In this document: positions 7,893 to 13,400 of the stretch, one piece after another
Numbering within the stretch: position 1 is the first letter of the stretch
Layout of the letters: every line of letters begins with the position of its first letter
Assembly: GCA_001179505.1 (NCBI GenBank)
Contig: CDMY01000047.1
Span: 62,001-126,000, forward strand
Length of the DNA: 64,000 nt
Source of the DNA: Vitrella brassicaformis CCMP3155
Taxonomy: Eukaryota > Protista > Chromerida
Reading direction: 5' to 3'
The notes under the pieces: generated by a model
The model's database searches: none
The model's input: only the letters and a program-made list of their open reading frames with translations
What the model was told of the DNA's origin: nothing
Made by a program: the position numbers and the translations under genes

Positions 7893-9322
7893 ATGCCTTG
7901 TGGATGGCCTTTGGCCACGTGGAAGGTCTCGGCAGACAACTGAGAAGGAGCTGATGGCGTGTTTAGCCATCCACTAGCACACATTCCCGGTACGCAAGAG
8001 GGAGAAGATGGGCGGGCGAGGGCAACGGTGCATTCATTCAGTGCATGGTTCCTCCTTACAGCACGACCCAGCCGTGTCCACTGTGACGATACTCGGCGGC
8101 GGTGTGGAGAGCGTCGTCGTGGCGGCCAACAGCACACAGCAACCGGGGGAGTTTGCTATGCTAGCCAGCATGTCCATGAATGCATCAATATGCCTTTTCT
8201 TCTGTGCAGGTGCTGCACGCGGCCAAGCTTCAAGCGTCCGTGAGCGCGCACACCTGTAGAGAGACCCATCGAGATCGATATGAGAGCGGAGAATACGTGT
8301 TGGTGACCTGCGCGAGGGCCAACACGGACGCACAATCCCAGGGCACAATCACTGCTCAGCAAGTCAGCCGGAGGCGACATGAGGTGACAAAAACAGTTCT
8401 GACTCTCTGTCTTGATCGATGTGTGTGTTTAGGTATTCGATCAACAGTGCGTCGGATCAGCTGATTGCGTGGCTGGTGGGGGGCGCGGTGGAAGGCCTGA
8501 AGGAGGTACACAGACGGTCAGCTGGCCATCGGCCAGCTTACGGTCAGTCCATTGACATTCTTTGTTGTCTGTGTTCAGTGATCGCATTCCTCGCGGCCTG
8601 TGCCCGTCTAGTCTGCTGCTCTTCGAGTCCTCCCTGCCGAACAGGAGGTTCCTCAAGTCGTCTGTCGGCAAGCTCAAGGCATCCCTTCGCGCCCGGCGGG
8701 CAGACGGGAGGGAGGATGTAGCGGCGAGGAGGAAGAACCAGAAGGTCGGCCAGCCATACGCCGGCCTTCAGATCTCTCCGCCGCTCGGACACGTGTGTGC
8801 TTTGGTGTGTCTTCCTGCAGGCGGCGGTGAAGGCCACCCAGGGGAAGGCCCACGACGAGCACTCGGAGGTAAGTCTGCGGGCATACAGATAGATCTGACA
8901 CGCATGGGAGGCGGGAGGATGGATGGATGGGAGGGAGCACACACACACGACACACCGCACAAACACATGGTGCCCTTTTCTGTCTGTCTGTGCCACATGT
9001 GTGTCTGCCCAGAACGACGACGAACTCATCCTCTGCACGGACTCCGACGGCGAGCCCCTCGACGAGGAAGAAGAGAAGGAATACGTGAAGGGCGGGAGGA
9101 AGGGGCTGGACGAGCTGAGGGCCGCCCGCCCGCCGCCGCCGAGAAGGCCCGCAAGGAGGAGGCCGACCGCCGAAGGCGAGAAAAAAGGCCAAGAAGGACG
9201 CCAAGAAGCGACGTATGCTGAACGGGTGGAAGGCTCAGCAGTGCCTCGGCTTGGAACTCCCGCCCAAGCACTACGAGGAGGCCCGCAAAGCCGCCATGCA
9301 GAACAAGAAGCTCCGCCGCTGA
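7893..9322 (+). CDS. Hypothetical spliced protein with basic C-terminus; two apparent 1-nt frameshifts in last exon; start uncertain
   Basis: GT-AG-bounded exons (HDPAVSTVTILGGG, YSINSASDQLIAWLVGG, NDDELILCTDSDGEPLDEEEEKEY). The last exon reads as natural protein only by switching frame near 9130 and 9183. Confidence 0.5.
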
Positions 9323-9627: not shown

Positions 9628-9927
9628 NNNNNNNNNNNNNNNNNNNNNNNNNNNNNNNNNNNNNNNNNNNNNNNNNNNNNNNNNNNNNNNNNNNNNNNNN
9701 NNNNNNNNNNNNNNNNNNNNNNNNNNNNNNNNNNNNNNNNNNNNNNNNNNNNNNNNNNNNNNNNNNNNNNNNNNNNNNNNNNNNNNNNNNNNNNNNNNNN
9801 NNNNNNNNNNNNNNNNNNNNNNNNNNNNNNNNNNNNNNNNNNNNNNNNNNNNNNNNNNNNNNNNNNNNNNNNNNNNNNNNNNNNNNNNNNNNNNNNNNNN
9901 NNNNNNNNNNNNNNNNNNNNNNNNNNN
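9628..9927. other. Assembly gap (300 N)
   Basis: N run flanked by G homopolymer. Confidence 0.99.
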
Positions 9928-9984: not shown

Positions 9985-10423
9985 TCTGCCCATATGACAT
10001 TCATCATTGTCTCTTGCTCGGCCTTCAGACATATCTCGTCGCCTGAAGCGCGCATTGATTGAATATATTGAAAGAATCCGATTCGTGTGCGAGAGCAGAC
10101 AGGTCCAAATCATCATCCTATGAGCACATGAGACCGTCCAAGAGATCAACACACACACTCTCCTATGAGACACTCACTCAATCCAAGAGATCAACACACA
10201 CACTCTCCTATGAGACACTCACTCAACTACCTTAACTCCTCAAAAATGGCCCATTGCACACACCGCGAGAGCGCACACACACACACACATGCTGTACAAA
10301 CCACCACAGAAGCTGCCTCCGTCAAATACTTCGTACCTATACCCCAGCACCGACCATCCATCTCACATCAACCGACATATCCCTCCCTCCCTCCCTCCCT
10401 CTCTCGCTGACTCGACACGTCGG

Positions 10424-13400
10424 TCACCTGGACTTGGGTGAGAGCGTCTTGAACTCATAGGCCAATGGATCGTCCAGATTGTCTATCTCAAGCCCCTCAG
10501 GCTCGTCCTTTTCCGCCCTTCTCGCAGTCGGCGATTCGGGCTTGTCCGGCTTCTCCACTTGAGGGAAAAAACTGGTCGGAGTCACGGCCGCAATGTGCGC
10601 CGGTGTGGGCCCCATCGACATGACACCGGTAGAGAAACGATGGCCCCCTACAGCGACCCCTACAGGTGTTTGCCCGATCGGCGGCATGTCATTCTCCTCC
10701 TCCACTCCGCCATGGTCGGTGTCCTCCTCGGGGGCGGTGATCCTGATCTTCTCGGGGGAGAGGCCGTCAGTTCTGTGCTCATAGGGGGGCATTGGGGGTA
10801 GCACCTGCAGCTCGGGGCTGGCCGCTTTCTCGATGTCCTCGTATGTCTCTCCACCGAGGGTTTGGTAAGCCTTTGGCGACCTGGGCGGCGACGAGCGGAT
10901 GTCGATGTGGTCGGCAGTGTGCGGGTGCGGGATCTCTGCCGATGACCGTGACTTGATCCACCTCCTGTAGCAGAACCACCCCACCACAGAGACGAGCAGT
11001 AGAGCCCCGACCACGCAGAAGATGACAACCAGGGTCGTTAGCTCCTCATCCTTGCCGCCGTCCTTGTCGACGCCGCTCCCGTCAGGGGGAGGGACGACGA
11101 TGGCGCCACTGTCGCCGACCACGAGGACAGGGTTTGGAGGGCCGAATAAGGGGCCGAGCGCTAAAGGGGAGGGGCCCGGGAGGAAGCCATCACCCTGGAG
11201 GCTCCTGCTGCTTGTATGAAGCGCTCGACGGCTGAACGCAGAGAACAGCACAGCCAGATCGCCGTTCGCGTGCTGCCGATGCAGACTGCTCCCATTCGTC
11301 CTCACCTGGCGGGGCAGTCGACGCCGCAGAAGGGGTCGAGACACATGGTGATGTCGCATGTTAGGTAGACAGTGGTGTATCCCGAGAAGGTGAACGAGTG
11401 TGTCGAGGCCCACGACCACATCTGCATCGAGTGGTGCTCCCACGCTGCCACATTCGGGATCGGCGCACAGTGCTCCTCTAACTGTGAAGGGGTCAAGGGG
11501 TGGGTGGTGAATCAGGCACATGCCATATGCAAGAAAGAAACAAAGGGTGAAGGATCAGAGCAAGAAGTGCCTTCGGCTTGCCATGGTGAATGTGTTCGGC
11601 GATTCAACGACGCTTTTGTCCACGGGGTCAGCCACACACCTCTTGAACACAGGATAAAAGCCACTAGCCTGCACACACACACACACAAAACGGATTGCTC
11701 CGGAACTTTCGCCGATCGGTAGTCTGTGTGTGTCAAAAGACTTGACGTACGGTTGTTTCCGCTCCGTAGTAGTATTTGGTTTGTGACTTGTCGCCGTACT
11801 TGTAGAGCGCCCCCTGCCCACCACCCGAGCACGTCGGGTCCGCACATATGTGGAAGAGCACCTTGAAAGTGCCGCGGTCCTCTACGAAGATGATGTCTGG
11901 GGATGGATAGACAGACAGCCACCAACACAAACGGGATTGTTCCCGTTCGTCTCTCCCTGTCTACTCTCTCTCTTTGTGTCTCTCCGACAAGGATGACTGA
12001 CCAGGGTCGGGCAGGTCGGTCTCATTGAGGGTGTCGTTGTACCAGTGACCGCCGTCCCATGCCGAGTCGCCTCCCGTATTGTTGGTGTTGTTGTACATGG
12101 GGTCCACCCTCGTGGTGAAGTTCCACTCGTGCGGCTCCACCTCTTCCGACGGCAGCTTCTTCTCCAGGCCCAGGAAAGCCCCTTCTACGATCGTGACGTT
12201 GTAGAGGATGGAGTAGTTCAGGGGGGCAATCTCGCACATGACCATTGTCGGGGGATTGCCATACCGGCACTGACAGACAGACGGACAGAGAGGGACAGAT
12301 GGGTGATATCTCTGTCTGTCTGTCTGTTTGTCTGCTTTGTACGGTGGATGTGTCGGTTGCGTCCACTTCGACATCAGAGACGTTGGTGTTGTTGGCCATG
12401 AGCCTTATGGTGCCCTCATCGGGACTTGCCGGCCGCTTGCCAGGCACGACAGGGTCGTCCAGCACGACCACCAGCACAGTGGCGATGCTCACGTTCTTCT
12501 CGTTGACCTTGGGGTACACCAAGTCCAGCAGCACCTGCGGGGCCAGGGGGTCGAAGGGGTAAGCGATGTCGACGGTGGTGAACTGCCAGTTGAGGGGGCC
12601 TGGTGAATTGGGCGTCCAATCGTTGCCCTGCCTGTCAGTGATGACTCCGTCGGCGATGCTGACTTCGTGGAGGGTGTTATCGAGCATGGGCACCAGAGAT
12701 ATCGTCACGGTCCTGCCCGCAAACTTCACCTGAGACACGAGAATGAGAGGTAAGAGCCGAGGTGCTGGCTGGGTGGGTGCTGTATGCCTGCCTGCTCACC
12801 TGGTTTGGATCGTTGATGTCGACGGCGAATGATTGGTCGAAGGGCAGGCCGGGATTGTTGACCTGTGAGGCGGTCACCCGCACCTCACCCTCACCGGGCG
12901 CCACATCCTCGTCAAACATAATCACCTGCAATCAACCAGGCAAGTAACACAAAGCCTGTTTGACGCGGACTTCTCTTGTGTCGTCACCGACCCACCAGGC
13001 TTGTCCCGATGACCGGCACATCCGTCGCACCATCCGAGGGCAAGTACACCACGGCGTTGGGCCCGTCGTTGTCTTTTTTTGCAGCCGTGCGGAAGGTCCA
13101 CTTGTAGCTGGCGGCCTGGTTGCCCGAATAGTCGACGAAGAGGCCTTCTTCCATCCCCACCCGGATCTCTTTATCACCCGGGAAGAAGCGAAGAGGGTTG
13201 ATCACCACCGTTGCACCAATTATCTGCCGCCAGCCACGCCGGAGACGCAGATGCATACGTTCGTGCATGGTAATAAAACCGGCATCAGTGGGTCTTGTTA
13301 CCATGTCGTTAGTGACTGGGAGGACTCGCGCGTCCACGAAGTCGCCGTTGGTCCTCTCCTCGACCGTGAGGGCAGCCGGGTAGGTTAGAGGGGAGCTCGA

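What the first reader, a model, noticed from the sequence alone, without database searches (positions are those of the whole stretch)
11000..11235. ZP-style maturation cassette: dibasic site, EHP-like patch and TM after the last Cys
With the 11305 intron removed the sequence reads ...GVDCPASRRALHTSSRSLQGDGFLPGPSPLALGPLFGPPNPVLVV...TM (seen). Animal ZP proteins place a basic cleavage site, then an external hydrophobic patch (LGP-type), then the anchor, and cleavage triggers polymerisation (knowledge). The same order here is independent support for ZP homology and predicts ectodomain shedding (inference).
Basis: partly seen in the sequence, partly recalled or inferred. Interest (0 to 1): 0.7.

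Follow-up and report, generated by a model that had tools for sequence, protein, structure and literature searches.

The report
ZP-type C-terminal propeptide in Vitrella protein
A 2,523-residue surface protein of the alga Vitrella ends in the same order as animal uromodulin and egg-coat proteins (basic site, L-x-L-G-P hydrophobic strand, membrane anchor), which supports real kinship with the animal ZP module, but cleavage and shedding remain unproven.

Summary
A public 2,523-aa Vitrella protein (P0001) contains the same junction.

After the last cysteine of a uromodulin/GP2-type ZP-C domain come:
- RR, at +4/+5 from that cysteine;
- LALGPLF, 21 residues later;
- a strong transmembrane helix;
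- a 180-aa cytoplasmic tail.

The hydrophobic patch is the solid part. Its motif occurs once in the whole protein and about 8 times per 100,000 residues in background. It recurs in the same place in three other Vitrella ZP-C genes, and more loosely in a fifth. It also mirrors uromodulin's patch (LNLGPI).

The basic site is weaker:
- It sits at the same offset as uromodulin's RFRS, and RR is kept at the same intron in the closest paralogue.
- It is not a furin consensus.
- One paralogue has only a single R and one has no basic residue there.
- No convertase P-domain was found in the genome.

Docking of the patch into ZP-C could not be tested, because both AlphaFold runs failed (pLDDT 36-38). 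No orthologues were found. Cleavage, shedding and polymerisation remain inference.

The scan had already noted this gene's ZP-C domain, and ZP modules with furin-type sites in other genes of this genome.

The parts
11306..11481 (-). Penultimate exon: C-terminal half of the ZP-C domain, with the cluster of the last four cysteines. The last Cys (C2252) is codon 11316-11314.
   Evidence: RNA contigs. Pfam PF00100 E 0.0068 on this exon alone and E 2.4e-4 on the whole domain. The profile aligns these Cys to UMOD C566, C571, C578 and C582.
11232..11305 (-). 74-nt GT-AG intron, phase 2, lying immediately before the RR codons.
   Evidence: The joint 11231|11306 is present in spliced contigs of X1 and X5 and absent from DNA-like X2. 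Paralogue L013 has an intron at the same place and phase.
11225..11230 (-). Dibasic RR (residues 2256-2257), 4 and 5 residues after the last Cys. Candidate cleavage site.
   Evidence: Same offset as UMOD R586. RR is kept in L013. L015 has KK, L002 a single R and L001 none.
11144..11164 (-). EHP-like hydrophobic patch LALGPLF (residues 2278-2284).
   Evidence: The motif occurs only once in P0001, against a background of 8e-5 per residue. It is aligned with LGVGPLI, AAFGPFF and LQMGPIL of the paralogues and resembles UMOD LNLGPI.
11099..11128 (-). Second short hydrophobic stretch, VLVVGDSGAIVV (2290-2299), in the stalk. It is either the continuation of the patch after a Pro-rich insert or a plain stalk.
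   Evidence: Hydropathy. The G-D that follows the patch in the paralogues aligns here.
10967..11035 (-). Transmembrane helix (residues 2321-2343), followed by YRRWIK as a stop-transfer sequence.
   Evidence: Kyte-Doolittle mean 2.84 over 19 residues.
10424..10966 (-). Cytoplasmic tail of about 180 aa with two Y-x-x-hydrophobic motifs (YQTL 10867-10856, YEDI 10843-10832). Stop codon TGA at 10426-10424.
   Evidence: No Pfam family. The RNA contig runs to 10415.

Best explanation
This is the C-terminal propeptide of a genuine, divergent ZP-C domain of the uromodulin/GP2 type, at the end of a type I membrane protein of Vitrella brassicaformis. The protein consists of a signal peptide, a ZP-N-like head, about 14 Big_5 Ig repeats, ZP-C, the cassette, a transmembrane helix and a tail.

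Shown: the transcript is spliced as read, and the order is last Cys, RR at +4/+5, a flexible Ser/Gly/Pro linker, an L-x-L-G-P-type patch, a stalk, a transmembrane helix and a long tail. The patch is conserved among Vitrella ZP-C genes.

Inferred: in the membrane-bound precursor the patch forms the last strand (beta-G) that completes the ZP-C sandwich, as in ZP3 and uromodulin. A protease that is not furin-type, perhaps one of the many S8 subtilases or an S1 enzyme, may cut at or near RR. That cut would release the roughly 2,230-residue ectodomain from the patch and the anchor, and open ZP-C for contacts with other molecules. I rate the patch as a true EHP equivalent at about 0.75, and real cleavage at RR at about 0.4.
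For: - Splice and junction.
- ZP-C identity: the profile of the paralogues hits only uromodulin (E 5.4e-5) and GP2 (E 7.8e-4) among 177,635 PDB sequences, with six Cys aligned. Pfam gives 21.7 bits and 27.1 bits for paralogue P0002, which is above the cut-off. The ten best atlas hits are all ZP-C families.
- Patch: unique in the protein and rare in background. It is conserved in position in L001, L002 and L013 although the surrounding linkers cannot be aligned. A GPFVI variant is present in L015. UMOD has LNLGPI 20 residues after C8, against 29 here.
- Basic site: same offset as UMOD RFRS. RR sits beside the same phase-2 intron in the closest paralogue, which matches P0001 at pairwise E 7e-9.
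- Anchor.
- The literature states that ZP-C is usually followed by a cleavage site, then a hydrophobic C-terminus, then a transmembrane helix or GPI anchor (PMC7665627; PMC8789258).
Against: - RR lacks Arg at P4, so it is not a furin consensus. By itself a dibasic pair in this place has about 5% chance.
- L001 has no basic residue before its patch; its RK and KR come after it. L002 has only one R.
- No proprotein-convertase P-domain was found in the genome.
- Both AlphaFold models were unusable (pLDDT 35.7 and 37.8), so docking of the patch is unproven.
- The Pfam score is below the gathering threshold.
- There are no orthologues to test conservation.
- There is no adjacent ZP-N or linker, and the 180-aa tail is unlike the short tails of animal ZP proteins.
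- No protein-level data exist.
Confidence: 0.6

Rival explanations
1. The ZP-C is permanently anchored and not cleaved, as in endoglin or betaglycan. The L-x-L-G-P strand is simply the constitutive last strand of the domain, RR is incidental, and the protein works as a membrane-bound adhesin or fibre rather than a shed, polymerising subunit.
For: - The basic site is not conserved across the family: none in L001 and a single R in L002.
- RR is not a furin consensus, and no P-domain convertase was found.
- The long tail with YQTL and YEDI sorting-type motifs suggests a trafficked membrane protein.
- Only 66% of nematode ZP proteins have predicted R/K sites (PMC7456536).
Against: - RR is kept beside the same intron in the closest paralogue, and KK follows the last Cys in L015.
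- The site has the same offset as the proven uromodulin site.
- The linker around it is Ser/Gly/Pro-rich and probably exposed.
Confidence: 0.27
2. The ectodomain is shed, but elsewhere: in the stalk near the membrane, or inside the membrane by a subtilase or rhomboid, as for apicomplexan micronemal adhesins (established knowledge). The patch would then stay on the released protein and no ZP-type activation would occur.
For: - There is a 36-residue acidic Gly/Asp/Lys stalk between the patch and the transmembrane helix.
- The helix contains small residues (VVGALL).
- S8 subtilases are abundant in the genome.
- L001 has RK and KR after its patch, not before it.
- MDCK cells also release a longer uromodulin form that is cut distally and keeps the patch (PMC4755741).
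Against: No recognised rhomboid or sheddase motif was tested or found here. This rival does not explain why RR is kept at the exon junction in two paralogues.
Confidence: 0.1
3. The resemblance is chance. The Cys-rich domain is not a ZP-C, and the RR, hydrophobic patch and transmembrane order is the generic look of any type I membrane protein stalk.
For: Pfam is below threshold (21.7 against 24.6 bits). A single-sequence PDB search finds nothing. There is no confident 3D model.
Against: - The profile hits are exclusively uromodulin and GP2, with six Cys in register.
- A paralogue scores above the Pfam threshold.
- All ten atlas hits are ZP-C.
- The G-P motif is rare (8e-5 per residue) yet present in the same place in every paralogue.
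Confidence: 0.03

Closest known systems
Uromodulin / GP2 C-terminal propeptide (consensus cleavage site RFRS, EHP VLNLGPITR, GPI anchor)
   Same: - The six ZP-C cysteines are in register.
- The first basic residue lies 4 residues after the last Cys.
- An L-x-L-G-P-hydrophobic patch lies 20-30 residues after the last Cys.
- A membrane anchor follows.
   Different: - The anchor is a transmembrane helix with a 180-aa tail instead of GPI.
- The site is RR rather than R-F-R-S, and the protease is unknown (hepsin in kidney).
- The linker from site to patch is about 10 residues longer.
- The ZP-N-like domain is about 2,000 residues upstream, behind 14 Big_5 repeats.
- The organism is a chromerid alga.
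ZP1-ZP4 egg-coat precursors (CFCS, EHP, transmembrane domain, short tail)
   Same: The order is cleavage site, hydrophobic patch, transmembrane domain (PMC8789258). Type I topology.
   Different: - The animal site is a furin consensus, which RR here is not.
- No P-domain convertase was detected in the genome.
- Animal tails are short.
- The Cys pattern here is of the uromodulin type.
Endoglin / betaglycan ZP modules (non-polymerising, membrane-anchored)
   Same: ZP-C followed by a transmembrane helix and a cytoplasmic tail. The last strand is kept in the mature receptor (named as non-polymerising in PMC7665627; the rest is established knowledge).
   Different: Those proteins carry an adjacent ZP-N and act as co-receptors. 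Here a dibasic pair sits at the uromodulin cleavage position.
Nematode standalone ZP-C proteins and LET-653 ZPc
   Same: ZP-C acts without an adjacent ZP-N. LET-653 needs cleavage at a basic site before a hydrophobic C-terminus.
   Different: Standalone nematode ZP-C proteins mostly lack the basic site and often the last strand. Here both are present, together with an anchor.

Membership tests
ZP-module C-terminal propeptide (cleavage site - EHP - anchor) | Lies directly after a ZP-C domain with the conserved cysteines | tested here: met
   The profile of the Vitrella paralogues hits only UMOD and GP2 in the PDB, with C5, C6, C7, Ca, Cb and C8 aligned. Pfam PF00100 gives 21.7 bits for P0001, below the 24.6 cut-off, and 27.1 bits for paralogue P0002. 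Atlas features point to ZP-C.
ZP-module C-terminal propeptide (cleavage site - EHP - anchor) | Basic cleavage site within a few residues of the last Cys | tested here: met
   RR lies at +4/+5 and UMOD R586 at +4. Conservation is partial: RR in L013, KK in L015, R in L002, none in L001.
ZP-module C-terminal propeptide (cleavage site - EHP - anchor) | The site is actually cleaved, releasing the propeptide | not testable with these tools
   No proteomic or biochemical data. Only transcripts were seen.
ZP-module C-terminal propeptide (cleavage site - EHP - anchor) | Hydrophobic patch between the site and the anchor, conserved in sequence | tested here: met
   LALGPLF is unique in the protein and the motif is rare in background. 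It aligns with the patches of three paralogues and resembles UMOD LNLGPI.
ZP-module C-terminal propeptide (cleavage site - EHP - anchor) | The patch forms strand beta-G of the ZP-C fold in the precursor | tested here: inconclusive
   Two AlphaFold2 runs with alignments of 5 and 7 rows gave pLDDT 35.7 and 37.8. No deeper alignment could be obtained.
ZP-module C-terminal propeptide (cleavage site - EHP - anchor) | Membrane anchor (transmembrane helix or GPI) after the patch | tested here: met
   A 23-residue helix with Kyte-Doolittle 2.84, followed by RR-W-I-K.
Furin-type consensus cleavage site (CFCS) | R-x-[K/R]-R or at least R-x-x-R, and a furin/kexin-type convertase in the organism | tested here: not met
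   The sequence is A-S-R-R with Ala at P4. PF01483 P-domain: no match in the genome. S8 catalytic domains are abundant.
Canonical polymerising ZP module | ZP-N joined to ZP-C by a short linker that can replace the patch in the filament | tested here: not met
   ZP-C is preceded by a Big_5 repeat and an N-glycan-rich spacer. The only ZP-N-like domain is residues 24-175, supported only by language-model features of low recognition, and BLASTP against the P0002 ZP-N is not significant.

The most novel reading that the evidence does not exclude
The whole ZP control switch operates in a single-celled alveolate: membrane-anchored precursor, basic-site cleavage, release of the hydrophobic strand and strand exchange between subunits. 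It would assemble a wall or surface matrix from very long Big_5 fibres whose ZP-N and ZP-C halves sit at opposite ends. The polymerisation mechanism would then predate animals or have crossed into the chromerid lineage, and it would work with a non-furin protease.
Probability: 0.25. Interest if true: 0.85.

Novelty: new variant of a known kind. Interest (0 to 1): 0.6.

Why it matters
A 2026 review still treats the canonical ZP module as an animal invention (PMC13361971), and no held paper links ZP domains to Vitrella or other chromerids. A fold alone can be convergent. Finding the regulatory tail as well, in the same order and with the same L-x-L-G-P signature as uromodulin, argues for common descent. 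It also makes a concrete prediction that can be checked by mapping the mature C-terminus. If confirmed, it would move the origin of cleavage-controlled ZP assembly outside animals and point to a matrix-building system in relatives of apicomplexan parasites.

Tried and rejected
- **Structure prediction.** P0001:2100-2320 with a 5-row alignment gave pLDDT 35.7. The P0002 ZP module with 7 rows gave 37.8. Both models are unusable, so no fold search was run.
- **Orthologue searches, all blank except self or P0002.** These were the word search with the last exon, profile word searches (the candidate lists were capped at 8,000), the exhaustive search of 1.84 billion representatives with the last exon (self only) and two metagenome scans.
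- **PDB searches.** Single-sequence phmmer found nothing relevant. A 31-column profile of the patch found nothing.
- **Own-genome searches.** The last two exons have no close paralogues. Pfam ZP-N gave one sub-threshold locus.
- **Literature.** The original EHP paper (PNAS 2004) is not held.
- **Intron retention** was rejected: only the spliced form appears in RNA-type contigs, and retention would stop the frame after CPAR.
- **GPI anchoring** was rejected: a 180-aa tail is transcribed in frame.
- **Handling of the spliced model.** The joined spliced model was never typed or sent to a tool. Window exons were searched one by one by reference, and the joined form was used only through the stored protein P0001.

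Full report
**What is in the sequence.** The finding lies in the last exon of a minus-strand, multi-exon gene. Contigs of four public runs were laid on 10000-13000. Two runs from different studies (X1, X5) contain spliced contigs with the exon chain 12926-12796, 12725-12343, 12269-12002, 11896-11751, 11668-11582, 11481-11306 and 11231-10415. Each skipped piece has GT..AG ends on the minus strand, except one GC..AG. A DNA-like contig of X2, from the same sample as X5, runs through unspliced. The split codon AG|C gives Ser, and the last exon starts with RR. An exhaustive search of 1.84 billion representative proteins with the last exon returned one protein, P0001 (2,523 aa), which is 100% identical over all 268 residues. 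Its sequence holds the same junction. A paralogue found later is labelled Vitrella brassicaformis CCMP3155 by its sources. The joined model was never typed into a tool. Window exons were searched singly by reference, and the joined form was used only through the stored protein P0001.

**Layout.** In P0001 numbering:
- the ZP-C-like domain is 2119-2254, with its last Cys at 2252;
- RR is 2256-2257;
- LALGPLF is 2278-2284;
- a second short hydrophobic run is 2290-2299;
- a 23-residue transmembrane helix is 2321-2343, with Kyte-Doolittle mean 2.84, the highest in the protein;
- a tail of about 180 residues follows, with YQTL and YEDI.

An N-terminal signal peptide makes this a type I membrane protein. 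No Pfam family matches the last exon.

**Is the preceding domain really ZP-C?**
- Pfam PF00100 gives E 0.0068 on the penultimate exon alone and E 2.4e-4 (21.7 bits, cut-off 24.6) on the whole domain. Vitrella paralogue P0002 scores 27.1 bits.
- A profile of the Vitrella paralogues, searched against all PDB sequences, hits only uromodulin (4wrn, E 5.4e-5; 6tql; 28yj) and GP2 (8xc5, E 7.8e-4). All six cysteines of the uromodulin-type ZP-C are in register.
- The ten nearest language-model clusters are all ZP-C families, with best score 0.92.

I take ZP-C homology as very probable.

**The hydrophobic patch.** The motif [LIVMFA]-x-[LIVMF]-G-P-[LIVMF] occurs 6 times in 75,683 residues of six-frame background from the window. 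It occurs once in P0001, at 2278, inside the 68-residue stretch between the last Cys and the membrane. The other Vitrella ZP-C genes that I could find carry the same signature in the same stretch, although the linkers around it differ in length and cannot be aligned:
- LGVGPLI in L001, which is P0002;
- AAFGPFF in L002;
- LQMGPIL in L013;
- a looser G-Q-G-P-F-V-I in L015, whose exons I joined by eye.

When short pieces are aligned, G-P is invariant. Human uromodulin reads C582-S-G-T-R-F-R-S, then G-S-V-I-D-Q-S-R, then V-L-N-L-G-P-I-T-R (peptides quoted in PMC4755741, and PMC11270373). Its patch is therefore L-N-L-G-P-I, 20 residues after the last Cys, against 29 here. In ZP3 and uromodulin this patch is the last strand of ZP-C (PMC7737619). 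A ZP-C needs such a strand, and the motif marks which of the two hydrophobic candidates it is likely to be. This last step is inference.

**The basic site.**
- RR lies 4 and 5 residues after the last Cys, the same offset as R586 of the uromodulin RFRS site.
- The closest paralogue is the L013 gene. Its pairwise E against P0001 is 7e-9, and it also has Big_5 repeats followed by ZP-C. It has RR in the same place, beside an intron of the same phase.
- L015 has KK two residues after the last Cys.
- L002 has one R, in T-A-R-A-L, against S-R-R-A-L here.
- L001 has no basic residue before its patch, and has RK and KR after it.

RR has Ala at P4, so it is not a furin consensus. A dibasic pair in this place has about a 5% chance by itself. 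The genome shows no convertase P-domain. It does have many S8 subtilase loci and a few S1 loci. A basic site just after the last Cys is therefore recurrent but not universal in the family, and the protease is unknown.

**What could not be settled.**
- Both AlphaFold2 runs gave unusable models for lack of alignment depth, so docking of the patch is untested and no fold search was made.
- No orthologue was found by any route, so conservation rests on paralogues within one genome.
- No protein-level data exist.
- The ZP-N-like head (residues 24-175) has only language-model support of low recognition, and BLASTP against the P0002 ZP-N is not significant. It is separated from ZP-C by the Big_5 array, so the uromodulin filament mechanism, in which the ZP-N/ZP-C linker replaces the patch, cannot simply be carried over.

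**Reading.** The most likely reading is a homologue of the ZP C-terminal propeptide. The patch completes ZP-C in a membrane-bound precursor. Cleavage at or near RR by a non-furin protease may release the ectodomain. The main rival is an uncleaved, anchored ZP-C of the endoglin/betaglycan kind. A smaller rival is shedding nearer the membrane that leaves the patch in place. Chance resemblance is unlikely.

**Novelty.** A 2026 review calls the canonical module a metazoan trait, and the held literature has nothing on ZP domains in chromerids. Within this scan, ZP modules, some with furin-type sites or EHP-like motifs, were already noted in other genes of this genome and in this gene's ZP-C. The present finding adds the regulatory tail rather than a new discovery of the domain.

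Noticed in passing
L013:1288-1978 and L016:1-3300 (G000 contig C533): The closest paralogue has the same architecture: Big_5-like repeats, a PAN/apple-like Cys stretch, ZP-C, an intron of the same phase, RR, LQMGPIL, a transmembrane helix, then KRRRKR. The exons were joined by eye and no RNA was checked.
   Followed up: partly
L001:862-2664 (= P0002, G000 contig C553): A single-exon 580-aa Vitrella protein with a signal peptide, a ZP-N-like part, ZP-C above the Pfam cut-off, LGVGPLIML and a transmembrane helix. Its basic pairs (RK, KR) lie after the patch, not before it.
   Followed up: partly
window 11482-11581 (minus strand): This intron has a GC donor (GC..AG) rather than GT. It is supported by spliced contigs in three runs.
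   Followed up: no
window 11896-11751 (P0001 2119-2141) and paralogues: Two extra cysteines in a C-x-D-x-x-C arrangement at the start of ZP-C are shared by P0001, P0002, L002 and L015. They may form a disulfide near strand A, like the IHP-stabilising disulfides described in nematodes.
   Followed up: no
window 10832-10867: The cytoplasmic tail carries YQTL and YEDI (Y-x-x-hydrophobic, sorting-signal type) within 45 residues of the membrane. The tail has no Pfam match and no relatives.
   Followed up: no
window 9629-9927: An assembly gap of about 300 N lies just downstream of the gene's 3' end, flanked by a G-run. The 3' UTR beyond 10197 could not be followed across it.
   Followed up: no
window 10202-10302, 11616-11716, 12222-12423: Depth spikes of 100-fold or more, with many false joints, occur in all runs at (CA)n and (GACA)n microsatellites in the UTR and introns. 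These repeats are common in the genome.
   Followed up: no
whole genome G000: No proprotein-convertase P-domain (PF01483) was found, while S8 subtilase matches are numerous (70 exon-level matches).
   Followed up: partly
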